NCBI RefSeq assembly: GCF_963853765.1
Contig: NC_088859.1
Span: forward strand, 34,596,001 to 34,660,000
Direction: 5' to 3'
DNA length: 64,000 nt
From: Magallana gigas
Lineage: Eukaryota
In this document: positions 11,248 to 57,472 of the stretch, piece after piece
Position numbering within the stretch: the first letter of the stretch is position 1
How the letters are laid out: every line of letters starts with the position of its first letter
The notes under the pieces: generated by a model
Seen by the model: the letters and a program-made list of their open reading frames with translations, nothing else
What the model was told of the DNA's origin: nothing
Database searches by the model: none
Translations under genes and position numbers: made by a program

Positions 11248-14236
11248 ATGCGGGGCCCCGCCGGCCTATGGCTGGTCGCGTGGCTGACCGCCGCTGTTCT
11301 GTCCTCCGCCCTAGGCCAGACTTGTCAGAGGTCGACGCTTCCTTGGCGAATAGCCGACGGAACCGACCCTGTGAAAATGGCGCGAGGAAACGTGACGGTG
11401 GTGGCGCTGCTGTTGGCCAGCTGACCTATGTGTCAGCAGCAGGCAGAAGGGTAAATAAAACCCAACGCTAAAGATCATTGTATGACATAGCATTGCATTA
11501 CCTCAAATTGTAGCAATACTATAGGCTCCTCCAAACACAGTTTCATATTTCCTTTTCTAAAGCATGTACAATTATCAGATGCAGTTATCAAAAGTTTTCC
11601 TAGACTTCTGTTTAAATGCTTGTCAATGATTATGGTAAAAAAGTGACCTGCAAAACCTTTTTTTATCTTCTTCAGAGAGCTAAGTATGATATTCTGATTA
11701 AAGTTAATCTTGAATCTTAAACACATTTTAGAAATCTGTTACCTTTATAGAAACATTTCTTTAATTTATAAAAAAACAATTATAATGACCTTTAATTACA
11801 CTTGCCAAAAAATAAAATTAAAAAAAATGAAAAAATATGAAGGGAATAAATTTTAATGTTGTTGGACTTTTACCTATATTTATTAAAATTCTTGTATTCA
11901 AGTTCAGAGTTTCATAAAACACCACAGAATTAAGTAGAGCAGTTCTATATGTTTAGAATTAAGTAGGCCCTGTGAAATACAGATTCATTAGCATATCTAT
12001 TATGTGCGTCTTTTGTCGGTCACAAACCCCGTCCCTGTTTTAATTTGATACAGATGTCACTTTCCTGACATACATATATACAATGTATTTAAATAGCCGT
12101 TCACATAAATATATCATGCAAATTTCTTTTTTGCAGAAAATAGGTTTACCGATTAGATTAATTTTTGACACGTACACCTGCACATAGCAGTAATATTTTA
12201 CTTTTTTAAATTCATATTCTAAACGACAATAACGTTTTCTTTTCATTCATTTTTGTATTACCAACATACTGAAATACTGATACAGGTAATTATATTTTTT
12301 GCAGTTTGGAAAGATTGAAGACATCATATCAACAGATAGGTAAAAGAGACATCACATTCTTAATTGTCAACCATGTCGCAGGAAAGGACTCAATTAACGA
12401 ACTGACTAGGCGAGTGTCATTTCCGGTCTACCAAGATGACCATACTTTGTCGATACAACAAAAACTCAACGCTAGCATAGACGACCTATTCCTTTATGAC
12501 AGGTACAAAGTAATACAAGCTGTGTATTAACGACAATCTTGTTCAAATTGATGCGGATTGGGGTCGTAAATATTTGATACGTATTCATAATTTGTATATA
12601 AATCAAGTGCAAAGTTTGGCCATTTGGTTTATGACTGATTACTGTACAAAAAAAAAAAAATAGTGCAATATAAAACCCCATGGCCAACTAAAATGTATAA
12701 TTAATTTATATTGTTAATAACTCAATCAATGGCATCTCTTTTTTTTCTTTTTTTTAAAGATGCAGTACACTCGTGTATCACTTAAAAAAACCTGAAAGTC
12801 TAGTGTCCCAGGGGACCATGCAAAGCAACTTGCTGACCACCTACTTAAACAACCCTTGCAATTGCACTAACAACTCTAACTCAAATGTAGCGACTGAGCC
12901 GACACCAAAAGAGCAACTAACAGGATCTGGCAGTTCACATACTTCCATCACTCGCAGAAAAAGACATATTGTAAACAACTTTGGTTCATCGTTGGTATCG
13001 ATGAACAGCGTTGTTTCTCATAACGGTCGTGTTCCAAAGTGAACTACTCATAGATGAGTTGCCATGCGTCGAAATCGAGCGCTGCGATACCTTTTGGTGC
13101 GAAGACTATGAAAATTTATTAAGAAGTATCGGTCAAATTATGAACCTCAACACTCATGTGTCTGTCCCAATCCATCGCCTGCTCTGAAACAAGAGTGCAC
13201 CTGATACGGTTATGGAATCTCAAATTCAGTCAGTTTCTGATCATGTCAAGAGCGCAGTAACACTGTTTATAGCGAATGTATTTGCAATAATTGTCCTGCG
13301 TTTCGGAGACGGCATCGTCAGCAGTTCGTAGATGATGACACCAACTGTGAACTTCTGACGAGCTGACACTGTAACCAGGAAAATGGTTTGTCGGCAACAG
13401 AATGCTCGTGACAACATCAGCTCGCGGCGTTAGAGCAACATCCGAGCTGACATTGTCACCTACAAGCAGACGATTCCTTGCAAGACTGTCAGTGACAAGG
13501 GTCTCGAGGATCCTGATCCTGACAGGAAGTTGGTACCAACATCCAGTGACAGTGACCGTCCGAAGGCGCTTCCTGTCTCTGAGAGAGTGGGTCATCAACT
13601 TGACAATGACAACAAATGCCAGTAAGAGACATTTCCTGACAGTGACAAGTAAATCCCGGGGAAACGAACTCGCAGACCTGACAATGACACCATGATGATG
13701 GCGACTGTCTTTGACAGTGTCAACAGTCTATCAACAATGTTGTCACGTGACAGTGACCCATGGGAAATACGGTTGATGCATATGTCAGCTGCTCTAATCC
13801 CAGTGCGTTGACTGGCCACTGACAATGACCGCTGGAAACAAGCAGTACGCGTAACTGACAGTGACTGAGTGACCAGTCAGGTGTTAACTCCTGATCCTGA
13901 CAAAACAGCATAGGGTCTTGACAATGACACACTGTGGACGACACTAATCTTTCTTGACAGTGCCAAGACTCAACACAGACTACCGAGACCTGATACTGTC
14001 AGACACCTGTAGACTCCACCAATGATTCTGTCTGACAGTGTCGTGCAATCAACGGGTCTTGACAGTGACAGACTCAGACCTCAGGAGGCATTGTTTGACA
14101 GGAAAAAGCCGGTCGCTCCTGAAATTGACATCCTATGTGACACTGACAAGTCAGTACCTGATACTGTCGAACAGGGACATATGACGACCGCGCCCACTGT
14201 CTTTGACAACCACAGACCTGACAGTGACAATATTAG
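11248..14236 (+). CDS. SELENOP: Selenoprotein P, copy 1 (46 Sec, 625 aa); exons 11248-11450, 12305-12502, 12760-14236
   Basis: Signal peptide MRGPAGLWLVAWLTAAVLSSALG; VVALLLAS-U-PMC (UxxC, TGA 11422-11424), cf. vertebrate VVALLQASUYLC. GT-AG phase-2/phase-2 introns join in frame to ...LNASIDDLFLYDR|CSTLVYHL (cf. human LNGSKDDFLIYDRCGRLVYHL). From 13040 the frame has 45 further TGA and no TAA/TAG until TAG 14234-14236. Total 1878 nt. Two SECIS in the 3' UTR. Confidence 0.97.
13040..14236 (+). CDS. SELENOP: Sec-rich C-terminal domain of SELENOP copy 1 (UGA2-UGA46)
   Basis: In-frame TGA at 13040,13055,13109,13202,13238,13364,13409,13448,13493,13514,13520,13547,13553,13580,13601,13607,13637,13643,13679,13685,13712,13748,13754,13820,13826,13856,13862,13892,13898,13919,13925,13955,13991,14033,14060,14066,14096,14120,14126,14138,14144,14159,14204,14219,14225; mostly in U-x-U, U-x-C or C-x-U motifs. 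Confidence 0.95.
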
Positions 14237-14441
14237 AGAGTAGGGTCTCGTCAAATCAAATCGTCAAATCGTCTCTACTGGTAAACATGTTTTAGGGTCG
14301 AAATGCAAAGACTGTCTTAAGTTTGACCAACGATTCACTTGCAATAATTTTCTTATTGCAATGTGTAATAATTTCTTTCCAATGTTGTATAGCGCATCTG
14401 TAATCAGTGCCATGAAGATCGATTTGCTGCACATTCCGTTT

Positions 14442-14512
14442 CGTCCTCTGTCAATGACGATTTCCAGATAAAACCCAACAGGTCTCCGGGGGTCTGATCC
14501 AATCAGAGAACG
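14442..14512 (+). promoter_or_regulatory. SECIS1 (form-2-like) of SELENOP copy 1
   Basis: AUGA 14454-14457 and UGAU 14495-14498; helix II GAUUUCC/GGGGGUC plus AGA/UCU; unpaired AAAA 14470-14473; mini-stem CC/GG; helix I CUCUG/CAGAG. Confidence 0.9.
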
Positions 14513-14819
14513 GCGGAATATGTGAAATCTTTCTGATGACATTGACTAACTAGATGCGTTATACAACATATTGTTTATATATGTACCTCATCTCATTGTT
14601 TTTTCTACGGCTTTTTTTAATGATTAACACGGTAAAGAATTGTATACTCTAAAACCTGTATAAAAAAATTTCCGAAATATTTTTGTTCTGAAGAAAATTG
14701 ATATTTTTAACTAACTTCCAGCCTATTTTGTTTTCTGTTACTTCTTTTTTGTTTTTGTTTTTGTTTCAAGTAGACGCTATATCATGTCATCATATTTTCA
14801 GAAAAAGAAAAATTCTAAC

Positions 14820-14918
14820 AATGTAGACCCTGCTATATCCGGCCATGAAATGTCACCCTGAAACTTTAAAAAGAGGGGTGGTTTTGAATAATTTGGATCA
14901 ATAGGCAGCATCTACATT
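14820..14918 (+). promoter_or_regulatory. SECIS2 (form-2-like) of SELENOP copy 1
   Basis: AUGA 14845-14848 and UGAA 14885-14888; helix GUCACCCU/GGGGUGGU; AAA 14861-14863; mini-stem CUU/AAG; basal AAUGUAGA/UCUACAUU. AATAAA follows at 14994-14999. Confidence 0.92.
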
Positions 14919-17640
14919 GCTACTTTTTTCTTCAGTATGATCAATATTCATCTTTACAATACAAAAAACTTAATATGTATAATGTAACTACAAAATAAAC
15001 ATGAAAACTAGACTTGTTTTATGTACATGTACATAGCTTTCCAAAACTGTTCTATCTTTTATTCCAGTGATAAGAATGTACTACTATTGCACTACTAAGT
15101 ATATAGTCAGATAACAACCATAGGGTATCATTGATTAATGACCGTCGTAATCCGGAAATTTGGACATTTAATTCTTAGATAAAAAATAAGATGCACTAGA
15201 TTAAAGGATTCGCAATTTTGATTGACATGCAACATACATAATAAAGCAACAAATTTTCACTTTATTTAGGTAAAAATGGTCTCTCAATGAATATTTCTAT
15301 TGCAATCCAAAGCGTTATATTATCATGATTAAACTTCGTCGCATTTGAACGAAATATTCAAAACGAACATAAACTGCCAAAGAACATAGTTTTCTCTTTT
15401 CCTCCTTAAATAAAGAATACTGAAACATTGCACGTGTATCTACAAGCACACAGGCAATTTCACATTTAGTTTCAACACACCAGTATCATACAATTATAAT
15501 AAATTAATATATATCATAATACTTATCTTGAAACTGGTTATAAAACACTACTCGTTTTCAGTTGAATTTTTTAAAATGAGGATGTTTATTAGTATATTAT
15601 AATTAAATAAATAATATTTGAAAATCAAGTAAAGGAAAAAAGTACATAAAACAGTAAATCCCCAAGCAAAATATAGCATAGTTTGTGCATTGTTCTTGGT
15701 GAGTTTGCCTTGGTGGTAGTGAGGAGAGCCCATAACGAGGTCAAGGCGCCTGTCTCTCTTTTAATCCATACATGTAGTTCAAAGTTCATTTTAAATTCCA
15801 CTTTCCCCATGGATATTAAAGTACGTGTATGTGATAACTGAAAATCAAATTCAAGTATCTTTGAAAGAAATTCAAAATAAAAAAAGGCGGATCAAGTATG
15901 TTTCACAGAGTTGAGTCATGCTGCCATTTATTTTTATTTTTCTATGAATTCCAGTTACAGTATTCGACGTTATCTTAAATAAAATATTTTAAATTTCGTT
16001 CGGTACCACAAAAATAAAAACCGATGTTGCAAATATGTTAATGATTAATTTCCTTAGACCTAAGCATCGCCATCTTGTGTAAAATTGTTGGAGAATTGCT
16101 ATTACAGAAAGGAGAAAACTCAGTGTTTTAAAAATCAAAATGAGTTATTTCCCTTTTAGATAAAAAAAAAATAATAAACAGTTTGCCTGACGCATTTTTC
16201 TCGAAATGTTTTGGCCTAAAAACCAAATGATTTTTTTGTTTTTAAAATGTGATTCTGTAACCCCTTTCAAGATATCTGCAGTAGTTCTCTATTGATTGAC
16301 TAATCTATAAACTTTTGCGAATTTTTATTTTCAAATGACCAATTGCTTTCATACCATATAGCACACCAAATTTTAAATTGACCTGCGAGTGACCATGCGC
16401 AGTTTTTGAATCACAATAACTGTAAAACAGTAGATTCATTCTGGTATGATTCTTCTGATAATTTCTGTTAAAAAAATGAATGTTAAATATTAAACGTCAT
16501 ATAATTTGTACAAACCGCTCATGTAGCCCTAGAATATTATTTTGCAATTTTTTGCCACCATCATAAAATCACAAAGTGAAAAGGTAAAGTTTAAAGATAT
16601 TCAAATTTCGGATATTGTGATGAATATGCAACTGAAATCATTTTAAGGGGAATAATTTAATTATGCTTGATTATTGTGATTGAAAAGATAAAAACAAACA
16701 AACAAACAAAAAATCAAACAAATGCATTATATTTACATTTACATCACCCTTATAAAGACACATGGCAAATAAGTTTATTTAATTTCTTTAAAATACAAGT
16801 GATAGTGTTGAATTTCGTAAATATTATTTTATGCATTTTTTATTTCAGCTTTACAAATTAACGTTTATCATTACAATAATAAAATCATTCATATTAAAAA
16901 GTTGTGTTATACGTGTTATCCCTTAAAGTTAAAAATAGCAAATGGTCAGTTCTATATTTAATTCTGGTTGTTGATTGGCTGAGAGAATTTTCCCGCGGTG
17001 CGTGGCAGGTAGTTTTCTGGTGAGGGGTAGTTTTTGTCGAGCTCAGGAGAGGTGGACATTATATGATTGAGATTACACAACTAAATACGACTTCTGACAT
17101 GACTTTATACTGTAAGTTCTTTTACTTTTTAATTCACAGGTAAACTCTAATTAAATAGCGTAATATTTTTGATTGTCTTTAGTTTTTACATAAAAGTGAG
17201 AATGCTAAGTGTGAAAGCAGATAATGAAATTATTATTTGCTGGTATTTATCAAAAATAGTGTTCTATACGCACACATTTATCTAATGTTTTACAGGATCC
17301 TGACTTGATTAACAGCATTTGTCATAATTATTTGAAGTGGACCCTGATCCACAATCAGGTTTTACAAAATTTTGTTACCTAAATAAATCTATAAATTGTT
17401 GTTATTATAGAGATGCATATATATGATATATCTCTAAATGTATAAATATATGATTTAGTAATGTTGCATATGTACGTGTAGAAATTACATGGATGAAGTA
17501 ATTGTTTATGTAAGAGCGATAACTCATATAATTATGAACATCGTGTAATTGTTGTGTATATATTGTTTATATCATTATCATGTTATGCATATTATAAGGC
17601 ATACTCTCATTGTAAATTTCAGGGTTTTCATGTTAATACA

Positions 17641-27154: not shown

Positions 27155-29520
27155 GTCAATGTGATAACAATGGTACATGTGTCTGTCACTGTGAAAACTG
27201 TATTTCCGGATGCATCACCTGTTTACCCGGATGGAGCGGATCTACCTCCAACTACTGTCAAAAATGTAGAGTATATAGAGTATTATTTTGAAATGCTATG
27301 TTCGGTGATAAATACAAGATTTTAAATACAAAGAATATATTCGATTACAAAACTTTTCAATATATTTTTATGAAATGACATTTTTTTTTAGCAAACACCT
27401 TTTTTCAATTAAATGCAACGGATAAACTCTTTGATGGTGATCTAAATACTTACCAAATGGCTGAAGGTCGAGTTCCATTTGTTCGAGTTCAATATAACTA
27501 TTCCACAGAAATTGATCAACTAGACATTACTGCTGTTCTTGGTATGATGATAAAAAAGGAATGATTTTAAAATGGCTTTCAAAATATTAGTGACAAAGCG
27601 TTTTATTAAATTCAATTTACATCTCTTGGTAGCAAATGGTATACACTACACAGTTTTTGTTAAGCAACTGCAATATACACGTGATGAGCTGGATATTTGC
27701 AGCAAATTTACATACAACAATAGAAGTATCAAGAAAACTGTTACAGTCATATGTAACCGACCACTACAAGGGAAATACATTGAAATTGTTGCCTCAAGTT
27801 CCACAGAAACAACTCTAAAAGTGTTTGAAATTGAGCGGTTTGGTAGGTTCAAAACATTTAAAATAGCCATTATATAGATACATATGAACTTAAACTGGTG
27901 TTGATTACTTAAGTCATATATGCTGAGAAGTATTAATATCTGAATTTAATAATTTATAAATGCGATTTAAAGTAAATCTTATGTCATGCATTGTCGTATT
28001 TCATTTGTATGATATTTTACAACACAAAATATATTTACTATTTATTTTGTCACTTTGTCCAACTGTAGAATGCTCGAATGGTACTTATGGTGTAAACTGT
28101 AGCAAAATTTGCTCGGACGGCTGTAACAAACAATGTGATAAAAATACGGGCGACTGTATTTGTAAAGGCGGTCGCTGGGGAAACTTTTGTAATCGGACAT
28201 GTCCTTCGTTTTGTGATAAAAACACGTGTAATTCTAATACAGGTGATTGTTTCAGTTGTATTTCTGGATATTATGGAGTGAGGTGTGACAAGAAATGTTT
28301 TTATGGATGTCAAGACTCTTGTAACATGACATCGGGATTCTGCGTGTGCAAACCGGGGTTCTATTCAACCAATTGCTCATTGCAGTGTCCAGCAATGTGT
28401 TTAAATAGCGAGTGTCATCAAGAAAAGGGAACTTGCCTGGCTTGCAGTTATGGAACATATGGCGACCGTTGCGAACTGAAATGTCTCGGTAATTGCAATG
28501 GTCAGTGTGATAGAAGAAAAGGCATCTGTGGAATTTGTGCCAAAAATAAGTACGGTACTTACTGTAATCAAACATGCCCTATAAATTGTGAAGCAGGTGC
28601 CTGTTTTAGGGATACTGGCAATTGTGAGAAATGTAAGATAGGTTACATGGGAGATATATGTAGTGAAAGCTGCCCGGATCATTGTGTGTATTGTGATCAA
28701 AACGGTTACAAATGTAAAAGTTGTGTTAATAAATGGTATGGTGTTAAATGCGAATTAGAGTGTCCTCCAAATTGCGGGGGAAATGGTTCCTGTATTATTG
28801 AAACGGGTATCTGCAATGTGTGTCCTGCTGGATACTTTGGGAAATCATGTACTCAGAAATGTAGTAAATTGTGTGACTCGAGCAACATTTGTGACCAGAT
28901 CACTGGACAATGTCGAAACTGCAAAGCTGGTAGGTACGGACGAGATTGTTCGGAACTTTGTAGAACTCAATGTATGAATTCAACATGCTTTAGTAATCAG
29001 TCATGTGTGTATGGTTGCGAAAATGGTTATGCTGGTGAACAATGCGAAATTAAATGTAGTGCTGTTGTTCTAAATTGTGTTCAATGCGATTTGGGGGACA
29101 ACGCTCCGATCTGCCGACATTGCGCCAATCAATGGTATCTGAAAGGAACAAATTGTTTCCAATGTCCCATAAACTGTTTTTCTTGTCTGTCAGGTGTGGA
29201 ATGCATGGAGTGCAAAAACAACTTTAACTATGGCAAGACTTGCAACTTAACGTGTAACACAGCCTGTATAAATAAGACATGTGATATAACGGGGATCTGT
29301 GAACACGGCTGTGACAACAGTAAGTACGGAAAGGATTGTGACAAGGATTGTATGAAACACTGTAAGACCTGCCTCAATTCAACAATGTGTTTGGAGTGTG
29401 AAGCTGGATATTTTGGGAAAACGTGTACAATGTGTTCAAAGATTTTTGATGGCAGCATCCGTGACCACGGTTGTCCAATTGGCTCTAAATCGTGTAGCAG
29501 TCTTGCAGTATGTTTAGAAA
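27155..29520 (+). CDS. Fucolectin(FTP)/F5-8C-like domain plus multiple EGF-like repeats (MEGF10/SCARF-like), partial; exons 27155-27265, 27392-27541, 27633-27842, 28069-29520
   Basis: All four exons are phase 1-1 with GT-AG and join in frame: GQCDNNGTCVCHCENC..., ...LFDGDLNT..., ...ICNRPLQGKYIEIV...LKVFEIE, then ~480 aa of Cys-rich GxYGxxC repeats. Start exon and transmembrane/terminal exons not found. Confidence 0.8.
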
Positions 29521-32500
29521 GTAAGCTAGTTTCTTTATTAATAATTTTTTTGGCCTCAATAATTTTTAGGTTGTGAAGATCTTTTGATTCATTGATATTT
29601 TTTGAAAAGGTTTAAACTCAATTCATTAATCTCAATATTTCTACACCAAGTCAGACTTTTTTCCAGTACTTGTATTTGATATACACAATGCAACACTGTT
29701 GATGATAAATTATTTTAAAGTATACTATAACAAGCAATCACAAAGGTTCACTAGCTCATATCATTACACATATACGTTTGCCATTTGTATAGAATTTGAC
29801 ATAAGCTGTATCCAATGCTTCAAAGAAGAATTTTTTGCTTATGCCAATCCCCTTAGGAAATGAAATCTGAAAGTCAAGATGATACCACTAGGAAGAATCA
29901 GACTCAATTGTTAAGAAGTTTCAGACAATTATGAAATAGCTTTTTTATGATCACAAGTCCAGGTTGACACTTATTGGTCGAAACCTTTTCAAAGTTAACT
30001 AGATGTGAACAGATTACACTGACGTATGTAACTGTAATGCATAAAAAAATAGACAATTACATGAATTCCAACCACAAAAATATATATATATATATATACA
30101 CTAAATGTAAGAATGAAAAAAAGTTTTAAAAAGCGAAATGGTGAGGCATGTGAGTAATGGTGAGTAAACATATTGTACGGGAGAAAGTAAATGAGGATCA
30201 GCGGCCTCGGACGGTATTGGTCCAAGCCCCTCGGGCTTGGGCCGATACCAACCGCTCGGGCTGATACCAGGGCCGAGATAAAAAAAAAATAGTGTGATAT
30301 TCTATATATATTCACTTTTGATTTGTCTGTATTTCATACACAAAAATCTTTTGTAAAGCTATTTGAACACTATTTCTAGATTTTAAAAATATTAATCATT
30401 TTAAAAGCAGCCCTTGTTTAAAAAATGTCGTAGTTAAAATAGAGTATATAATCGATATCTTCTGCGAAAAAATAATACATTCTTGTTTCTTTACACCTTT
30501 AGATTATTTTACAAATATGATTCACGACATTTTGATTATACATGAATTTACTTCGACTTATTTGATTCCGGTAAAATGCGTTTTAACTGTCTCTTATCTA
30601 AATTTCAATTTAAGTAGTTTGCTCCATATTAAGACATTTAAACCAGTTTAAGTGTTCCCTATACCGTTTTGATAAATGAACATAATTAAACCAACCTACA
30701 TGTTCAATTGATCTATGAATAACCGGAAGAGTCCACAGCATCTATATGTCTGTATGTGGTGCAAGTGGCTAGAAAAGGATAATCTTTTAAAATCCTGTAA
30801 TTGCACCAGCGGTTGTTCTGAAATCATTTAAATATTTACGTAAACCACGGAATTGTGTATTGTTACACCAATGTGAATTGAGAATCGTCTGAAGAGCCAA
30901 GATCATTGCTAATTTTTACATGTATTTACAGATGCGCCGCCTTAAAGCTATATTGGAGTCATCATTGTTCGTGGGAGACCAATGTTCGTGGCATTCGTGG
31001 GTAACCCTTGTACACGAATTTAAATCCCCACGAACGTGTATACAAGCATTTGTTAAGATTTTTTTTTACAAAATAGAATTTGCTACCGACGAAATCACGT
31101 CCCCACGAACCAGGAAAATTTTTGGCTACCCACAATCATTGATCCCCACGAATAAAAATGATTCCACAGTGTATCACATGTTTAACGAATGTTTACAACT
31201 AAGAATTGTTTGTGATTTTTCATCAAGCTACATTAGTTAGAAATTGTCTGCAAATTATACAGTTTAATTCAAACGAATTTAAAAGAATTTAATTACCTGA
31301 ATATGAGAGTGAGGTGAAAAGTAACGGATTAGTTAGACAACTTGTATCTTGACATTTTTCTTTCAACTCTATTTCTCCTTATCTCAGACTAACTCATCCT
31401 ACGATTATTAGACTACAGAGATTATTGATATTTCGGTATCTCTTAACTGACCATCGCCATGATAAACGCTAATCTATTCTTTTAATCCGCTGGTGTTATG
31501 AAATAACATTTTCTCTTTTAGACAGATAGTCAAACAAACTTGTAATCTTAAAAACATTTTCATTTTATCCTAATTTTATCCTAATTTTCAACACTTTCTA
31601 AAAGATACATCTGATTACTTTGATGAATATTTCTTTATCACTATTAAAACTTTAAATAACATTTATTTAGTTATTATTCTATCTATCACACAATTTTTAT
31701 TAAAGGGGGTGTTGAGGTGAAAATAAGTGGTATTATGTACATGTACGCATGCAGAATTCTTCTTCAGAGGCAATTATAATATTCGGGCCCGTCTAAAGAT
31801 CAACAGTATCTGTAGAGCAAAATCCTTGTGGGGTCAAGGGGACTAATCATTTGGAAGTTCTTAATTTTTTTTTAGATTTTAAATGGGCAATGTCACGATT
31901 TTTGTCAAATATTATTTTTTTCATTTTATATTTGTTAACAATGCTTAAGAAATTTATTTCTTATGATCAACAAAAATTTAAGTGGCAGTTGTATAGTTAT
32001 AGGCAAGATATATACAGAGCTAAAAGATTTTTGTTATGTAGACAAGGTTGGTGGAATGTTTTTGTTTACATGGGTTCAACTAACCGATAAAAGTAATTTT
32101 TAAGCACATGCTTCTATTTCCTAGTTTGTATTTAACATTAATAAACAAGTAATGCAAATTGCAACTCACGATAGACTTTTTTGTAACAAATCTTGTTTTT
32201 TAACAACAACTCGATGGTTCTCTCTCTCTCTCTCTCTCTCTGAAGCATTTTTCAAAATGGAGGTTGCAAGCCCCATAACCGCCCCCTTTTTATCCGCCAC
32301 TGAATACGCTAAGTAATTTTTAAAAAACAACAACTACGACTGTGGCATAAAGATCAAACAAAATGAAGAAAAGGTAATCCCGAAAATCATAGGTAAGTAA
32401 ACAGTGTATATCTCAAAACTTTTTTGAACTAGCGTTAACATTTTTACATTATGTACTCACTTCCTTGGCACTTAATAAAACATACAAGTGCGCATACCAC

Positions 32501-34342: not shown

Positions 34343-36749
34343 ATGCGGAGCCCCGCCGGCCTTTGGCTGGTCGCGTGGCTGACCGCCGCTGTTCTGTCCT
34401 CCGCCCTCGGCCAGACTTGTCAGAGGTCGACGCTTCCTTGGCGAACAGCCGACGGAACCGACCCTGTGAAAATGGCGCGAGGAAACGTGACGGTGGTGGC
34501 GCTGCTGTTGGCCAGCTGACCTATGTGTCAGCAGCAGGCAGAAGGGTAAGAACCTAAACCGAATTTAAAAAATATCAATTTCGAAGATTTTCTTTGCCCC
34601 TTCCTAGAAAATGCATTATTTTAAGATACTACACTTACCTTATGCTTAAATATACCCCCGTCTGAAATATTATTTATATAATGTGATTTCTTTCGTTTGA
34701 AGAACGAATAAGACATGGTAATTGTAATGAATGTATTCCGGAAATATAAAGTTTTCAAATCGAATACCTTTATTGATATGTTTAGTCACGCGGTTCAATA
34801 GAATCGGTTTCTTTAGGGCGACACGTAGAGATTCAGTTTGATGAGTCCAACTTATAACTTCATTTTGATATTTAATAGTGTATGTATCAGTAAATACATT
34901 AAGGCTGTTGCGTGTCGTTGCTAGTCCATTGAATGTGTTGTTGTTTTATTGCTGATTCGTATTAGAAATGAATGGGTTTTAAATGAGAATTAGTGTGTAA
35001 GCGTAATAATTAGAAATACAATTAATAAAAACAGATTACATCATGCCTTACTTGAGTCGCAATCTTCACACTCCTATTTAGCTTGTTACGCTGTCATTTT
35101 CTTGACAGTTATGTTGTACATTTATCAAATATTATGCAATTCTCGAATGCAAAATTTTAAGCTATCAACTTAATTTAATTCCAAGCCTTAAAAGTCCTTC
35201 AGTAATAAAGGATAACGCCAATTTCAGAAAAGGAAACGATTTTCATGAATCAACACTATATTCATTCTCTCAAATCAAAAAACTTACTATTTACTTTCAT
35301 TCTTTTCACAGTTTGGAAAAATTGATGACATCGTATCAAAATATAGGTAAAAGGGACATCTCATTTTTCATTGTTAACCATGCCAGAGGAGAAGCTTCTG
35401 TTAACGAACTGACTAGGCGAGTGTCATTTCCGGTCTACCAAGATGACAACACTTCGATGATACAACAGACACTCAACGCTAGCATAGACGACCTATTCCT
35501 TTATGACAGGTACAAAGTAAAGCCAATACTTTGGATAGATTTCAAAGTGAAAATCATTTCCCTGGTCGTAATAATTGAACGAAAAACAAAAAACCCAACA
35601 AACAAGAGAAAAAATGTCAATGTGACAGCAAACCTGGTTTTTCTTTTGTGTGAACAGTATCCATAATCTATTTGTCAATCCTGAATTGATAAACACTTCC
35701 TCTCCTAAGGAATGGGGGTACTATGTATGCAATATTTTGCGAAAAAAAATAACTTAGATAAACAGCTGGTATTTTTTTTTCATAAGTAATCAAAAATCAA
35801 AATCCAAGTAATATGCACATCTCTGCTCTATTTACTACTGATCTGCGTTTGGAGTATCCTTCCGACAGCCACCCGCCATTTTCTCCACTTCAATAACCGG
35901 GTTTTCCTTTTTGGAAAAAAAACGATTAAAAAGGGGCCAACATAGAAAGCCTTTTAAAAAGGCATTTGCTTACTAGAGCTAACGAGTTTTCAAATGTTAA
36001 AATTTATCAACATTTTAGTAATTATTTTTTTTTTCTTTTTTAGATGCGGCACACTTGTATATCACTTGAGAAAACCTGAAAGTCTCGTGTCTCATGGAAC
36101 CATGCAATCCAACTTGCTGACCACCTACTTAAACAACCCTTGCAAATGTACTGATAAGTTTAAATCAAAGGTTTCAACCAAGCCAACTCTATATCAACTC
36201 CAAAGACAGGCGGGCAGTTCGCTATCTTCCATTATTCGTCGACGCAGGCATGTATTAAACCACTTCGGTACATCGTTGGTGTCAACAAACAATGTTCCTT
36301 CTCGCAACGATCGTCCTTCAGATTGACCGAACAACAGATGACGCAGGCAAGTGTCTAACATAGTTGGTACACAAAATCGCGTTCCTTCAGACAATGCTCC
36401 TCAAGAATGACCGAATAGCAGATGACGCAGGCATGTGTCTAAAATAGTTGGTACACAGAATCGCGTTCCTTCAGACAATGTTCCTCAAGAATGACCGAAT
36501 AGCAGATGACGCAGGCATGTGCCTAAAATAGTTGGTACACAAAATCGCGTTCCTTCAGACAATGCTCCTCAAGAATGACCGAATAGCAGATGACGCAGGC
36601 ATGTGTCTAAAATATTTGGTACACGGAATAGCGTTCCTTCAGACAATGTTCCTCCTGTAGAATGACAGAATAGCAGATGACGCAGGCATGTGTCACGTAT
36701 ATTTGGTTCATCGTTGATATTCATGAACAACGGTCGCGTTGCAAACTAA
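34343..36749 (+). CDS. SELENOP: Selenoprotein P, copy 2 (11 Sec, 368 aa); exons 34343-34545, 35312-35509, 36044-36749
   Basis: Same exon sizes (203, 198 nt) and phases as copy 1; UPMC with TGA 34517-34519; ten more in-frame TGA (36324,36339,36408,36423,36492,36507,36576,36591,36663,36678); ends at TAA 36747-36749; total 1107 nt; both SECIS intact. Confidence 0.92.
36324..36700 (+). repeat. Coding tandem repeat, 84-bp unit (last 87 bp), ~5 units; unit U-PNSR-U-RRHVSKIVGTQNRVPSDN(A/V)PQE
   Basis: First TGA of each unit at 36324, 36408, 36492, 36576, 36663; units nearly identical and frame-preserving. Confidence 0.95.
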
Positions 36750-37253
36750 ACGGCCTGCGGATGCATTGCCCTACGTCAAATTGAGTAATATTCTGACCAT
36801 GTCAAAAGCGCTTTTTTGTCTCTTAGAGAGTGGTTCACTGCCTTAAAAAAATGAAGCAATTACCAGTACCAGTACGAGACATTTTAAGACAGTTACAAGT
36901 AAATCCCCTGGAAACGAACTCGCAGACCTGACAGTGATATTAGGATTATGGTGACTGCAATGGCAGCAGTTCATCAACACGTTACAGTGACCCCATTCAT
37001 TGATTCATATTTCAGCTCCTGTTATCCAATTGCGTTGACTGGCCACTGACAATATGACCTATTCAAACAGACAGAACGCGTAACTGACAGTGATAGGGCG
37101 ATCATGTGTTAATCCCGATAAACAGCGTAGAATCTTTCAATGTCAAAAGGTCTTGACAGTGGCAGACCCAGTCCTCGTGATGCTCTGTGTGACAGGAAAG
37201 AGCCAGTCACGCCTTTAAGTACTGTCTTTGACAACCGACAGTGGCAATATTAG
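36750..37253 (+). pseudogene. Decayed remnant of the ancestral Sec-rich domain in the 3' UTR of SELENOP copy 2
   Basis: Collinear blocks match copy 1 13043-14236, e.g. GTAAATCCC..GGAAACGAACTCGCAGACCTGACA, GCGTTGACTGGCCACTGACAAT, CGCGTAACTGACAGTGA, ACTGTCTTTGACAACC and the old stop CAATATTAG (37251-37253). About 500 nt versus ~1190 nt, with deletions and TGA changed to AGA/TTA/TGG/CGA. Confidence 0.88.
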
Positions 37254-37460
37254 ATAGCAAGATCGAACTCGTTAAATCGTCTCTACTGGTATCTACGCTT
37301 CATGATCGAGAGGCAATGATAATGTAAAGTCTGCCCGAATGTTGACGAAGGCAATACATGTAATTTTTTTTACTGAAATGTGTAATGAATCTTTACTTCC
37401 ATTTTGTATGACGCATCTGTAATCAGTGCCATGAAGATCGATTTGCTGCACATTCCGTTT

Positions 37461-37531
37461 CGTCCTCTGTCAATGACGATTTCCAGATAAAACCCAACAG
37501 GTCTCCGGGGGTCTGATCCAATCAGAGGACG
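37461..37531 (+). promoter_or_regulatory. SECIS1 of SELENOP copy 2
   Basis: AUGA 37473-37476 and UGAU 37514-37517; almost identical to copy 1; helix I CGUCCUCUG/CAGAGGACG fully paired. Confidence 0.9.
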
Positions 37532-37888
37532 GCGGGATATGTGAAATCTTCCTGATGACATTGAATTTCGAGATACTTTATACAATACATTTTATATACT
37601 TCACCCCAGTGCCATTTTCCTGAGGCCTGTTAGAAAGTAGTTTAAAGCTTTGTTAAACTATACTCTGAACTAATTTCTGAAACCTCTGTAAAATTTTGTT
37701 TTAAGTTATCAATTAAAAAAAATCAAAAAGAAATTTAAACTACCTTTCACCTCATTTTAATTTCTGTTAATAACTCCTCTTTATTTGTTTTAAGTAGAAT
37801 CTATCTCCTGTCATCATATTCTCAGTGTAAAAGTTGTAATAGTTTTATGCTTGAATGTTTTTATCAATGAGAAAAAATCATATCTATT

Positions 37889-37979
37889 CGGATCCTGCTG
37901 TATCTGACCATGAAATTTCACCCTGAAACTTTAAAAAGAGGGGTGATTTTGAACAATTAAGATAAATAAGCAGTATCCA
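37889..37979 (+). promoter_or_regulatory. SECIS2 of SELENOP copy 2
   Basis: AUGA 37910-37913 and UGAA 37950-37953; UCACCCU/GGGGUGA helix; AAA motif; CUU/AAG mini-stem; AATAAA at 38062-38067. Confidence 0.9.
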
Positions 37980-40657
37980 CATAGCTACGTTTTTTCTCTG
38001 TATGATCAGTGTACTAGTACATGTATTTCTTTCCAACGGCAAAAATGTTGTATACTTGAAAAATAAAGATAAAAACTAACAATTGCTTTGTGTAGATGGT
38101 TTCCTTCAATAATCTGTATTTTATTCCTGCGAAATGAGTGTACAACTTGGGACTACATCCAAATTAAGTTTATGAGGGCCATATGCAAATTACATAGGGG
38201 TTATTAATTAGACTGATATTTCTTAAATTCAAACGAAAAAATGCAAAGGAGCAAAAATATTACAATTTTGATAGAGGCTTACATGCTATTATAATACACA
38301 AGCTTTAAGTAAAGAATAAATACAATTCGTGAAAAATATGGTCCCTTATCAAATCCATTGCAAAGTGTACTTGAAGTAGAGATTAAATTTAGTCTTATTT
38401 GAATGAAATATGCAGAACCTGTAAAAATAACCAAAGAAAGCTGCTTTCATCCTTTTTATTTGCCCCTTAAATAATGAATACAAATACATTGTGTTTGTAT
38501 CTAAAAGCACATATTATCTTACATTTAGTTACAACACATCTCATCACTATTATACAGTCTTACAAGATTCAAGAGAAGATATTGATAAATTTCAAAAAAT
38601 ATACATGATATGCACGCTATACACAGAACATTTTCAGATTCATTTAAAAAATGGTGATGTCTAAATATATAGAATTATATTACACTTTCAATGCATTTAA
38701 ATACAATGCAGTTCTTGTTATAATTTGTATTATTATGTAACTATGTATTTCACTCATACACACTGCACTAAAACAACCAAGAAGTCTGAAGCTGAAGGAA
38801 ATTTAAGATGTTTCCATTTTGTTGATAAAATCACCGTACAAAATGTACATGGGACTAGAAAATTTCATCATTAAGTGGGTATAGGGTCACAATTAATGCA
38901 CGTTTACTGGTACATAATGAAAAAAAAAAGATGTCTTCGTGCATCTGCAAATCTCGATGACCCCAAAGAATGCAAGCATTTTATAAGTAGATTGTTTCTT
39001 AAGTATATAAATTCACCTGAATTGATTAATCTTGACATCATTCTTTATGCCAGATACCATGTTACAAATATGTAATAGCCAGTATTTACAACAAATCAAA
39101 ATTGAAAAATTTCATTAAGGAGGCTAGGTACAGTCAACAAATAAACCATCAGATCGTCCTTAAGGTAGTCCTATACTCGGCAGTAAATGGTCTCAATCAT
39201 TGGAGGCTTAGCTTTAAAAGACAGATATGCATTATAGCAAATTGAATACATGCCTAAGAAATCTGTATGTTTACATGCTAGATTTTTTGTTATCACCTCT
39301 CAGAAAGGTGTACCCCCTTGCAAATATCATTAACAATGACGAAATTTGCCAGACGTCCATTTTTTCCTAAAAAAATTATTACCAATTTTGGGGAAATTAG
39401 AACTGGATATACAAAATGGAGTACGAACATTTACTTAAACCATGTCACATCAAAATTTTTGTGCAAGTTGTTTGAGTAAGTATCCTTTAAGGGACTGATG
39501 CATCAAAATAAAATACAAAAAATGTGATGCTGGTATCGTGTGTGGTCATTTTTTATTTTTTCATGGACTCAAACCTAAATTCATGGTGTTTATTCTGTAG
39601 AATGCATCTTAGAAAAAGATTTGGTAAAATAAACCATAGGTTGACGGATTACTTTTAAGGCCATAAGTTCTTAACCAAAGAGACCCTAAAGAAAAAATCC
39701 GTAAAAATCACATTTTACTACAGTTTTCTGCAGAGGTATGTCAATAATGTTGGATATTGTTTAATCATTAATTAATCATTGCTTAATTAAATATGAATTA
39801 GCTTCTGTCTCTAAATTTTAACCGGTTTTATTAAAAAAAGAGAAAAATTCGGGGCGGGGGGACCCATCAAAACAAAGAATAAAAGCATACCTGTGATCAT
39901 GGTTAATTGAAAATTTCGTTTTTCATTTTACTCTTACAAAATCGAGTTTCTCAACATTTCATTTCTATCTCTCATACAATACATACATTACCATTCTAAT
40001 AGCTAATTATTGTCATTGTTTACAACAGGGATGCATAGCAAAATCAATACCGGGTATCTAAATCACTATGTAAAATTCGAACCAAGATTGTAAAATCCAT
40101 ATTATGACGTAGTGTGATACTGGGGCTACTTTAAATTTTTAAAAAATGATTTTTCATAAGCTGTAAACTTTTGTTTGGTAAAGAAAAATTCCATTTACTT
40201 TTGCTTTAAAATTTGAATACTTTCTCATATCTTTATATAAAGCTCTTCTTTTTAGAGTTATAGAATGATAAAGAGTGCAGTCTATAGTACCACAGAATGT
40301 GAGAAATTGGACAAAAATTGCTTTAGAGATATTCATACAACGTTTCTTCATGTATAGCCATAATAGGGATTATCATCCTTTTCAAATAAAATCATCGTTA
40401 AAGATATTCATACAACATTTCATATGTATATCATGTAGAGGTTATCACCCTTTTCAAATTAAACCACTGTTTTTCACACCTACACATGTATCAACCATAC
40501 AAAGTTTTGTAAAAATATATATGATAAAAGCATTATCAACAAAATTGGGGGAGGGGAACTTATAGATAAAAATAATGGAAAATTCAAATGAATTAGTAAA
40601 TAATGAACTCAATACACACAAAAAATTATATCATTTTATGTTGACTACACCTAGTGT

Positions 40658-56182: not shown

Positions 56183-57472
56183 ATGACCGGATGCACGATA
56201 AAGATGCGGTGTCTCAAAATCTTACTGGGCAGAACGCTACGGAATACTCTCATTCTTATGGCTATTTGCCTGTCATTGCTCAATATGATGAACTGGGTCT
56301 ACTATACCTATTCAGAAGAGCTCATTGAAACATACAACAAATACTCACCGCCGACAGGTGCAGTCTTTTTAACACGTTTTGCATCGAATTCATCGACTCC
56401 GAAATCGATTTCAAAACATCAAACCGCCACTGTGATACCCCAGAGTTTCGAAAGACGTTATCCGTTATTTGACCCAGGGGATAGCTATGACGATAACGGA
56501 ATCTACATGGAAGTGGGAGCCCCTCTTGATACCAAAGATGTGCGCAAAAAGAAACTAAATTTTGACCCTTCAAAGTATCCGCTGGAAGTAGATCTTGTTA
56601 AATTAACAAATTATATTTTTGAGGGAAAAAAGATTAAAAACAAACCGATCAACCCTCATCCGTATCAATTTGTGCACGAAGCTGCTGATGCGTGTCATAT
56701 TAAAAATCTCCATCTAGTTGTTATAGTGAAATCTAGAGCCAATAATACTAAGACCCGGGAAGTCATAAGGAAAACATGGGGCAACCCAACGATATACAGT
56801 GGGGTGGCTGTAATTTTTCTTCTGGGACAAATGCGTGGATGTGAGAAAAATATCTCTGAAGAAGCTCAAAGGCACAAAGATATTGTACAAGAGAACTTCG
56901 TCGACGATTACTCCAACAACACGCTAAAAACAATAATGGGGTACAACTGGGTAGTTCGCCATTGTTCCAACGCAAATTTCAATCTTTTCGTGGACGATGA
57001 TATCTTTGTGGTGGTGAAAAACCTCGACAATTACAGAAACAACAAAGACAAAGAACCCCGGATCATGGCCGGGAAACTTCTTCCTCGCTCGACCCCCTTC
57101 CGGGACAATGGGTCGAAGTGGTTTGTGAGTTGGGAGGACTACCCCTTTGACAGGTACCCGCCGTATCTCGCCGGCGGGGGCGTTCTAATGTCTTGGGACG
57201 TTACAAGAGCATTTGCAGCGGCCTTTCCCTATGTGAAAACAATATCAATTGATGATTCCTATCTAGGAGTCATTGCTAAAAAGCTCAATATAGCGCCTAG
57301 AAACCATGCTGGCATGGTGATCAGGAACCCTGGCAAAGACACAAAGTCCGCCATGACCATGAATTTTGGCAGCGTTGTTGCATTTCATCGCATTCCGTCC
57401 AGTGAGTCGATGCAGGCAACGTGGAATCAGTATACAGCTAAATATCCTATTACACCCAAGCCGAAAAGGTAA
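56183..57472 (+). CDS. Beta-1,3-galactosyltransferase family (GT31; brainiac/B3GALT-like), single coding exon, type II membrane protein
   Basis: 429-aa ORF with N-terminal TM segment and motifs VKS...REVIRKTWG, VIFLLG, DIVQENFVDDYSNNTLKT, FVDDD, YPPYLAGGG, IDDSYLG; strong acceptor (poly-Y CAG) at ~56147 in the 5' UTR. Confidence 0.93.
   Translation: MTGCTIKMRCLKILLGRTLRNTLILMAICLSLLNMMNWVYYTYSEELIETYNKYSPPTGAVFLTRFASNSSTPKSISKHQTATVIPQSFERRYPLFDPGDSYDDNGIYMEVGAPLDTKDVRKKKLNFDPSKYPLEVDLVKLTNYIFEGKKIKNKPINPHPYQFVHEAADACHIKNLHLVVIVKSRANNTKTREVIRKTWGNPTIYSGVAVIFLLGQMRGCEKNISEEAQRHKDIVQENFVDDYSNNTLKTIMGYNWVVRHCSNANFNLFVDDDIFVVVKNLDNYRNNKDKEPRIMAGKLLPRSTPFRDNGSKWFVSWEDYPFDRYPPYLAGGGVLMSWDVTRAFAAAFPYVKTISIDDSYLGVIAKKLNIAPRNHAGMVIRNPGKDTKSAMTMNFGSVVAFHRIPSSESMQATWNQYTAKYPITPKPKR

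What the first reader, a model, noticed from the sequence alone, without database searches (positions are those of the whole stretch)
11248..14918. Hidden 46-selenocysteine SELENOP gene that the ORF track breaks into fragments
Seen: three exons splice into one 626-codon frame with 46 TGA; the last ~400 codons contain 45 TGA but no TAA/TAG, and two SECIS follow. Known: SECIS-dependent UGA recoding and the two-SECIS design of SELENOP; I recall a 46-UGA SelenoP being published for Pacific oyster, so this copy is probably not new. Inference: it is a selenium storage/transport protein with ~7% Sec.
Basis: partly seen in the sequence, partly recalled or inferred. Interest (0 to 1): 0.75.

Follow-up and report, generated by a model that had tools for sequence, protein, structure and literature searches.

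The report
Oyster selenoprotein P gene, 46 UGAs
This is a real, expressed oyster gene for selenoprotein P in which 46 in-frame UGA "stop" codons are read as selenocysteine with the help of two SECIS RNA hairpins, and a 46-selenocysteine oyster selenoprotein P was already published in 2019, so this is a confirmation, not a discovery.

Summary
Three coding exons (11248-11450, 12305-12502, 12760-14236; GT-AG introns) give 625 codons and a TAG stop, with 46 in-frame TGA. The last 398 codons hold 45 TGA and no TAA or TAG.

A public transcript contig (L008) carries exactly these two junctions.

- **Family:** the spliced product matches Pfam SelP_N and has a U-x-x-C motif.
- **SECIS:** two SECIS_1-like hairpins (14446-14508, 14836-14899) follow the stop. 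They recur in a tandem paralogue and in a related species' mRNA, and SECIS1 also in a more distant one, with compensatory changes.
- **Conservation:** full-length mRNAs of two related bivalves carry 49 and 47 UGAs. All 46 window UGAs align to UGA in the nearer one. Nearly all exchanges are UGA to UGU/UGC (Sec to Cys). Tail dN/dS is about 0.11.
- **Machinery:** the genome has tRNA-Sec and SepSecS.

A review credits Baclaocos et al. 2019 with 46 Sec in oyster SelenoP, so novelty is "already known". The scan had already noted this same stretch (s1-375706) and its paralogue (s1-375613).

Translation through all the UGAs and the selenium-transport role rest on inference.

The parts
10776..10798 (+). 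3' end of a non-coding 5' exon. Its start is not determined. Donor GT at 10799-10800.
   Evidence: Transcript contig L008 bases 28-50 match 10776-10798 exactly, then continue at 11228. The block 10754-10806 is also conserved in the paralogue.
11228..11450 (+). Coding exon 1: acceptor AG at 11226-11227, ATG at 11248. It encodes a signal-peptide-like N-terminus and the U59-x-x-C62 motif, with UGA1 at 11422-11424.
   Evidence: SelP_N profile positions 4-36. GC is 65%.
12305..12502 (+). Coding exon 2, the core of the thioredoxin-like SelP_N domain.
   Evidence: GT/AG boundaries. SelP_N profile positions 47-116. The junction 11450|12305 is present in L008.
12760..14236 (+). Coding part of exon 3: the end of the N-terminal domain, an RRKR polybasic site (codons 199-202), then the Sec-rich tail. 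Stop TAG at 14234-14236.
   Evidence: The junction 12502|12760 is present in L008. SelP_N profile positions 118-168.
13040..14233 (+). Sec/Cys-rich tail of 398 codons with 45 UGA, 21 Cys and 14 U-x-U pairs (10 of them UQU). Of all 46 UGAs in the gene, 35 are followed by C.
   Evidence: All UGAs are conserved in L009 and tail dN/dS is 0.106.
14446..14508 (+). SECIS 1. It has a mini-stem above the AAA, so it is form 2-like.
   Evidence: SECIS_1 29.3 bits and fold. It is identical in the paralogue. Compensatory changes against L009 and L010, with AUGA, AAA and GA invariant.
14382..14569 (+). Extended hairpin of about 190 nt that carries SECIS 1 at its tip.
   Evidence: MFE -69 kcal/mol, z = -6.05, 0 of 200 shuffles as good. 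Three changes in about 160 nt against the paralogue, where the flanks are mostly diverged. Kept in L009 with 7 pairs changed on both sides.
14836..14899 (+). SECIS 2. It has an open apical loop, so it is form 1-like.
   Evidence: SECIS_1 26.4 bits and fold. Counterparts in the paralogue (37901-37964) and in L009 (2599-2660). One C-G to U-A compensatory change in helix I between the paralogues.
14994..14999 (+). AATAAA, the likely poly(A) signal. This is inferred only.
   Evidence: Read. Similarity to the paralogue's 3' UTR ends near 14943-14960. No read-level evidence for the 3' end.

Best explanation
This is the selenoprotein P (SELENOP) gene of an oyster, most probably the published 46-UGA Pacific oyster gene.

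**Product.** A four-exon mRNA (one non-coding and three coding exons) encodes a 625-residue secreted precursor. It has a signal-like N-terminus, a thioredoxin-like SelP_N domain with a Sec59-x-x-Cys62 redox motif, a conserved polybasic RRKR site, and a 398-residue tail with 45 further selenocysteines, mostly in U-x-U pairs.

**Mechanism.** The UGAs are decoded as Sec, not stop, because two SECIS hairpins in the 3' UTR recruit the Sec insertion machinery (SBP2, eEFSec, Sec-tRNA). By analogy with vertebrates, one SECIS serves the isolated UGA1 and the other the processive decoding of the tail.

**Shown here:** the gene structure, the spliced transcript, family membership, the SECIS elements and their conservation, purifying selection on the tail as protein, and presence of tRNA-Sec and SepSecS in the genome.

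**Inferred:** that ribosomes reach the TAG, secretion, the division of labour between the two SECIS, and the selenium storage/transport role.
For: - **Frame:** 46 TGA and no TAA/TAG in 625 codons, while the other frames of exon 3 have mixed stops; 0 of 20,000 shuffles lacked TAA/TAG.
- **Transcript:** contig L008 is 98-99.5% identical and has the exact junctions 11450|12305 and 12502|12760. It holds 33 in-frame UGAs before the contig ends.
- **RNA runs:** RNA runs from several studies hold 0.60-0.68 of the sampled words of 11200-15000. My count of the exonic share is 0.68. Runs of unstated library type hold 0.85-0.93.
- **Family:** SelP_N matches run seamlessly across the junctions at profile positions 4-36, 47-116 and 118-168. 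P0001 scores 66.2 bits.
- **Relatives:** L009 (49 UGA, 73% amino-acid identity) keeps all 46 UGAs. L010 (47 UGA, 36% identity) shares 38. Fifteen of the 17 exchanges with L010 are TGA to TGT/TGC.
- **Selection:** dN/dS against L009 is 0.19 for the N-terminal domain and 0.106 for the tail, at pS about 0.6-0.7.
- **SECIS:** hits occur at matching 3' UTR positions in the window gene, the paralogue, L009 and L010, with compensatory pairs and invariant AUGA/AAA/GA.
- **Stop context:** 35 of 46 UGAs are followed by C. UGA-C is a weak termination context (established knowledge).
- **Machinery:** two tRNA-Sec genes (77.3 bits, anticodon TCA) and a multi-exon SepSecS gene.
- **Literature:** 46 Sec in oysters, cited to Baclaocos et al. 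2019. Multi-Sec SELENOP with UGA-only stops is reported in hundreds of metazoan genes.
Against: - There is no direct evidence here that ribosomes pass UGA2 or that Sec is inserted.
- Both SECIS hits are below Rfam's gathering score (29.3 and 26.4 against 35). Folded alone, the SECIS segments are no more stable than shuffles (z -0.05 and -0.35).
- L008 stops at 13958, so a single-molecule record of the whole mRNA in this species was not obtained.
- The species name is coded, and the 2019 paper is not held. Identity with the published gene therefore rests on the matching count of 46 and the oyster labels.
- The protein alignment used Cys as a placeholder for Sec, which favours Sec/Cys columns.
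Confidence: 0.93

Rival explanations
1. The gene is a real SELENOP, but the main product is the short N-terminal protein made by stopping at UGA2 (227 residues). On this reading the 45-Sec tail is translated rarely, or only when selenium is abundant, so it acts as a selenium-sensing or conditional extension and not as a constitutive store.
For: Sec insertion is generally inefficient for most selenoprotein mRNAs (review text). Truncated isoforms ending at UGA2 are known for mammalian SELENOP (my knowledge). Nothing here measures decoding efficiency.
Against: The tail has a lower dN/dS (0.106) than the N-terminal domain, keeps 46 of 46 UGAs in a relative at saturating synonymous divergence, and exchanges Sec only with Cys. 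That pattern requires the full tail to be made often enough to be selected. In addition, 35 of 46 UGAs sit in the weak UGA-C context.
Confidence: 0.2
2. It is the SELENOP orthologue of a different oyster species, or a divergent strain, and not the published Pacific oyster gene. In that case it would be a new member of a known kind.
For: Names are coded. L008 differs at 1-2% of bases and at 8 of 167 residues. The 2019 sequence could not be compared.
Against: The UGA count is exactly the published 46, whereas the nearest relative found has 49. Runs are labelled oyster. A 564-Mb genome in 29 contigs fits a chromosome-level Pacific oyster assembly (and my memory). Oysters are highly polymorphic, so 1-2% divergence fits alleles.
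Confidence: 0.15
3. The tail is a decayed or untranslated region (a pseudogene or 3' UTR) whose TGA richness comes from a TGAC-rich simple repeat.
For: The TGACAGTGAC motif recurs. The tandem paralogue really does carry a fossil of such a tail behind a TAA.
Against: No tandem repeat is detected in the tail. There is no TAA/TAG in 398 codons while the other frames have them. dN/dS is 0.106 and UGAs are conserved position by position across species. The paralogue's fossil tail shows what decay looks like: TAA/TAG stops and indels.
Confidence: 0.01

Closest known systems
Pacific oyster (Magallana/Crassostrea gigas) SelenoP, Baclaocos et al. 2019, J Mol Biol 431:4381
   Same: Both have 46 Sec-UGAs in an oyster SelenoP. 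Both are bivalve SelenoP genes with very many Sec. From memory of the paper, the published gene also has two SECIS.
   Different: Nothing demonstrable. The paper and its sequence are not held, so identity was not tested base by base. I could not check whether the paper covers the non-coding 5' exon, the tandem 11-Sec paralogue or the extended SECIS1 hairpin.
Vertebrate SELENOP (human 10 Sec, fish up to 37, lamprey more than 130)
   Same: [quoted passage not shown]
   Different: The tail is far richer in Sec than in mammals and is built mainly of U-x-U (UQU) pairs. There is no long His-rich stretch. The tail sequence is not alignable to vertebrate SelP_C, but that was not tested because of the stops.
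Related bivalve SelenoP mRNAs found here (L009 with 49 UGA, L010 with 47 UGA)
   Same: The same architecture, a similar length (623 and 590 residues against 625), the same Sec positions (46 of 46 and 38 of 46) and the SECIS arrangement.
   Different: Three window Cys (codons 330, 547, 561) are Sec in L009. Only one SECIS was detected in L010.
Tandem paralogue in the same window (34343 to about 36690)
   Same: The same exon structure, the same UxxC exon (94% identical), and the same two SECIS.
   Different: It has only 11 Sec, 10 of them in five R-U-R-R-containing repeats. A TAA then precedes a decayed remnant of the long tail.

Membership tests
Selenoprotein P (SELENOP; Pfam SelP_N PF04592) | N-terminal SelP_N thioredoxin-like domain | tested here: met
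   The three exon pieces hit SelP_N at profile positions 4-36, 47-116 and 118-168 with 18.9, 22.3 and 21.1 bits. Each is just under the 23.2 cut-off, but they are colinear and gapless across the junctions. The transcript ORF P0001, about 95% identical to codons 61-227, scores 66.2 bits, E 3.8e-18.
Selenoprotein P (SELENOP; Pfam SelP_N PF04592) | Sec in a U-x-x-C redox motif in the N-terminal domain | tested here: met
   U59-P-M-C62 in '...ALLLASUPMCQQQ', conserved in the paralogue, L009 and L010.
Selenoprotein P (SELENOP; Pfam SelP_N PF04592) | C-terminal tail with multiple in-frame UGA and no other stop type | tested here: met
   45 TGA, 0 TAA and 0 TAG in 398 codons. UGAs are conserved or exchanged with Cys codons in relatives.
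Selenoprotein P (SELENOP; Pfam SelP_N PF04592) | Two SECIS elements in the 3' UTR | tested here: met
   Two SECIS_1 matches (29.3 and 26.4 bits, below the gathering score of 35) at +210 and +600 nt from the stop. The same pair is present in the paralogue and in L009. Covariation is seen, with invariant AUGA/AAA/GA.
Selenoprotein P (SELENOP; Pfam SelP_N PF04592) | Secreted protein (signal peptide) | not tested
   The N-terminus MRGPAGLWLVAWLTAAVLSSALG|Q looks like a signal peptide, but I ran no predictor. This is inference from the sequence.
Selenoprotein P (SELENOP; Pfam SelP_N PF04592) | Actual insertion of selenocysteine at the UGAs, and selenium delivery or storage | not testable with these tools
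   Only indirect support is available: the Sec machinery is in the genome and the tail is under purifying selection.
Eukaryotic SECIS element (Rfam RF00031) | AUGA...GA non-Watson-Crick quartet, helix II of about 9-12 pairs, and unpaired AA(A) in the apical loop or bulge | tested here: met
   Both elements align to the model from end to end, with AUGA, AAA and UGA in place. Scores are below the curated threshold, so membership rests on position, conservation and covariation.

The most novel reading that the evidence does not exclude
SECIS 1 is not a free-standing 60-nt element. It forms the tip of a hairpin of about 190 nt (14382-14569). This hairpin is almost invariant between the two paralogues, while the flanking UTR has mostly diverged. 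It is kept in a related species by compensatory changes in the basal helices. It might be a dedicated extension needed for processive decoding of dozens of UGAs. I have not seen such an extension described, but I could not read the 2019 paper.
Probability: 0.2. Interest if true: 0.5.

Novelty: already known. Interest (0 to 1): 0.22.

Why it matters
SELENOP with dozens of UGAs is the extreme case of stop-codon redefinition. One mRNA makes ribosomes ignore a stop codon 46 times in a row. That was established for oysters in 2019, so the value here is practical. The report gives an exact, transcript-backed gene model, including a non-coding 5' exon, both SECIS and all 46 Sec codons, for a locus that ordinary gene callers cut into fragments or truncate. 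It also shows that the tail is among the most constrained parts of the protein. This model is the reference against which the neighbouring 11-Sec paralogue and its fossil tail, which are separate findings, should be read.

Tried and rejected
- **Read laying:** No read-level junctions, ends or depth were obtained. Queries to tools and local BLAST queries stopped at 11799 and resumed at 11842. The window file served only as a local BLAST subject in scripts.
- **Exact search of JGI metagenome contigs** for the exon 2-exon 3 junction: no match.
- **The search for homologous proteins** with the 93-residue exon 3 piece: no candidate. The length window excludes the 167-residue transcript ORF, which the exhaustive HMMER search then found.
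- **The 2019 paper** could not be opened by DOI, PMC id or PubMed id. What it showed experimentally is therefore cited only through reviews or marked as memory.
- **RNA structures at the start codon and just after UGA1** in the spliced mRNA are not more stable than shuffles (z about -0.4). I make no claim of an SRE or ISL.
- **Tandem-repeat origin of the tail:** TRF finds no array in it.
- **The mir-1303, mir-4529 and cow-rumen-1 hits** lie far below their thresholds, in a T-run or inside the coding tail. I treat them as chance.
- **The pseudogene reading** is rejected (see rivals).
Full report
**1. What is in the sequence**

The window is AT-rich (about 32% GC), intron-bearing animal DNA. An ATG at 11248 opens a frame that runs to a GT donor at 11451. 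The frame resumes after an AG at 12305, leaves at a GT at 12503, and resumes after an AG at 12760. Joined, the three pieces give 625 codons and then TAG at 14234-14236. There are 46 in-frame TGA: one at 11422 and 45 between 13040 and 14225.

In exon 3 the coding frame has 45 TGA and no TAA or TAG in 491 codons. The other two frames carry 6 TAA/6 TAG/6 TGA and 11/2/12. None of 20,000 shuffles of the 398-codon tail was free of TAA/TAG, and shuffles gave about 6 in-frame TGA, with a maximum of 19.

**2. It is transcribed and spliced as proposed, with one more exon**

- An exhaustive HMMER search with the 65-residue exon 2 piece found P0001. P0001 is a 167-residue ORF that begins MCQQQAEG, runs through exon 2 and ends at ...GRVPK. 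That is exactly codons 61-227 of the spliced product.
- Its source, L008, is a 1670-nt Logan contig of run ERR3564172.
- L008 aligns to the window at 98.3% (exon 1), 99.5% (exon 2) and 98.4% (exon 3 as far as 13958). It reads GCAGAAGG|TTTGGAAAG and TTTATGACAG|ATGCAGTAC across the two junctions.
- L008 holds 33 in-frame UGAs and no other stop before the contig ends.
- After an Illumina adapter remnant, L008 bases 28-50 match 10776-10798, which is followed in the genome by GT. The contig then continues at 11228, which is preceded by AG.

Two further observations support the exon structure.

- Similarity to the tandem paralogue is confined to blocks that coincide with the exons: 10754-10806, 11196-11454, 12296-12513 and 12739 onwards. 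The introns have diverged beyond detection.
- RNA-labelled runs from several studies hold 0.60-0.68 of the sampled 31-mers of 11200-15000. Runs of unstated library type (kind shown as '?') hold 0.85-0.93. My count of words lying wholly inside the exons is 2572 of 3771, or 0.68. If transcripts ended at 13958 the share would be about 0.41.

**3. It is a selenoprotein P**

- The three exon pieces match Pfam SelP_N at profile positions 4-36, 47-116 and 118-168. The gaps are exactly the ten residues UPMCQQQAEG and the codon split by intron 2.
- P0001 scores 66.2 bits against a cut-off of 23.2. The full-length relatives score 117 and 131 bits.
- Sec59 lies in a U-x-x-C motif.
- Only two SelP_N loci exist in the 564-Mb genome, and both are in this window.

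**4. The UGAs behave as sense codons in evolution**

Two full-length relatives were recovered from public assemblies: L009 (2730 nt) and L010 (2875 nt). Their gene callers had read UGA as Trp.

| Relative | In-frame TGA | Other in-frame stops | Amino-acid identity to window | Window UGAs aligned to UGA |
|---|---|---|---|---|
| L009 | 49 | none | 73% | 46 of 46 |
| L010 | 47 | none | 36% | 38 of 46 |

- The three extra UGAs in L009 are TGT (Cys) in the window.
- Against L010, 15 of the 17 exchanges are between TGA and TGT/TGC.
- The alignment used Cys as a stand-in for Sec, which favours such columns. The result of 46 out of 46 at 73% identity does not depend on that.
- Leaving out the UGAs, dN/dS against L009 is 0.19 in the N-terminal domain and 0.106 in the tail, with synonymous sites near saturation.

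The tail is therefore translated in this frame and strongly constrained.

**5. The recoding signals**

- Rfam SECIS_1 matches the + strand from end to end at 14446-14508 and 14836-14899, which is 210 and 600 nt after the stop. Both scores are below the curated threshold.
- The same pair is found behind the paralogue, at 37465-37527 (identical) and 37901-37964, and in L009. One element is found in L010.
- Across these sequences AUGA, AAA and GA are invariant. Helices I and II and the mini-stem change on both sides while staying paired.
- SECIS 1 has a mini-stem above the AAA and SECIS 2 an open apical loop. From my knowledge, this is the same order of forms as in vertebrate SELENOP.
- SECIS 1 sits on a hairpin of about 190 nt (z = -6.05). 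This hairpin is nearly invariant between the paralogues and is kept in L009 with seven doubly changed pairs. The second 'AUGA' in its lower part reads AUCA in L009, so it is not conserved.
- Of the 46 UGAs, 35 are followed by C.
- The genome encodes two adjacent tRNA-Sec genes (77.3 bits, anticodon TCA) and a multi-exon SepSecS gene.

**6. How it most likely works**

Shown:
- the gene model and the spliced transcript;
- membership of the SELENOP family;
- two conserved SECIS;
- a protein-level constraint on a 45-Sec tail;
- Sec machinery in the genome.

Inferred from established knowledge of SELENOP:
- The SECIS elements recruit SBP2 and eEFSec with Sec-tRNA so that ribosomes insert Sec at each UGA.
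- One SECIS serves UGA1 and the other the processive stretch.
- The product is secreted and carries or stores selenium.
- The conserved RR[KR]RH site between domain and tail may be a convertase site that separates the two parts.

**7. Comparison with what is known, and novelty**

- Review PMC8230778 states that SELENOP has 46 SeCys in oysters and credits Baclaocos et al. 2019.
- PMC8557442 summarises the same paper as finding the most Sec-rich SelP in bivalves.
- The 2019 paper itself is not held.
- The nearest relative I found has 49 UGAs and this gene has 46. The runs are labelled oyster. I therefore take this to be the published gene, or an allele of it, and rate it 'already known'.
- The scan had already noted the same stretch and its paralogue.
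- I could not check against the paper whether three things are covered there: the 5' exon, the extended SECIS 1 hairpin and the tandem paralogue. Of these, only the hairpin would be of wider interest.

**8. Limits**

- I have no direct evidence of translation past UGA2.
- No read-level data could be obtained.
- The species name is coded.
- No single contig from this species covers the whole mRNA.

Noticed in passing
window 34343-38010: A tandem SELENOP paralogue lies 23 kb downstream on the same strand. Its exon 1 is 94% identical and its exon 2 is 87% identical. It has only 11 Sec, 10 of them in five repeats containing U-P-N-x-R-U-R-R. A TAA follows, then a decayed remnant of the long tail (36817-37214), and its own two SECIS (37465-37527 and 37901-37964).
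   Followed up: partly
window 11248-11450 versus 34343-34545: Coding exon 1 is 65% GC in a genome of about 32% GC. It is almost unchanged at synonymous sites between the paralogues (pS 0.038, against 0.217 in exon 2). That suggests either gene conversion or an RNA-level constraint around the start codon and UGA1. A 6-bp hairpin (GCUGAC...GUCAGC) embeds UGA1, but the region is not more stable than shuffles.
   Followed up: partly
window codons 199-203 (about 13000-13015): A polybasic RRKRH site sits between the SelP_N domain and the Sec-rich tail. It is conserved as RRRRH in both related species and in the paralogue, and looks like a proprotein-convertase site.
   Followed up: no
L003 1501-1587 and 2681-2766 (G000:C3, about 53.011 Mb): Two tRNA-Sec genes (anticodon TCA) lie in tandem about 1.2 kb apart.
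   Followed up: no
L010 2708-2875: After its 3' UTR, the distant relative's contig ends in another TGAC-rich stretch (GACAATGATTGACATTGACAAGGACTGACAG...). It resembles a SelenoP tail. It may be a chimeric assembly or a second gene.
   Followed up: no
L008 1-26: The Logan transcript contig starts with an Illumina adapter remnant (GAGTTCAGACGTGTGCTCTTCCGATC). By coincidence, 9 nt of it also match window 10767-10775, so the contig says nothing about the true transcription start.
   Followed up: yes
window 27960-29576 and 56183-57472: Two long + strand ORFs lie between and beyond the two SELENOP copies. One is an EGF-repeat protein with weak teneurin/laminin EGF matches. The other is a galactosyltransferase (PF01762, 149 bits).
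   Followed up: partly
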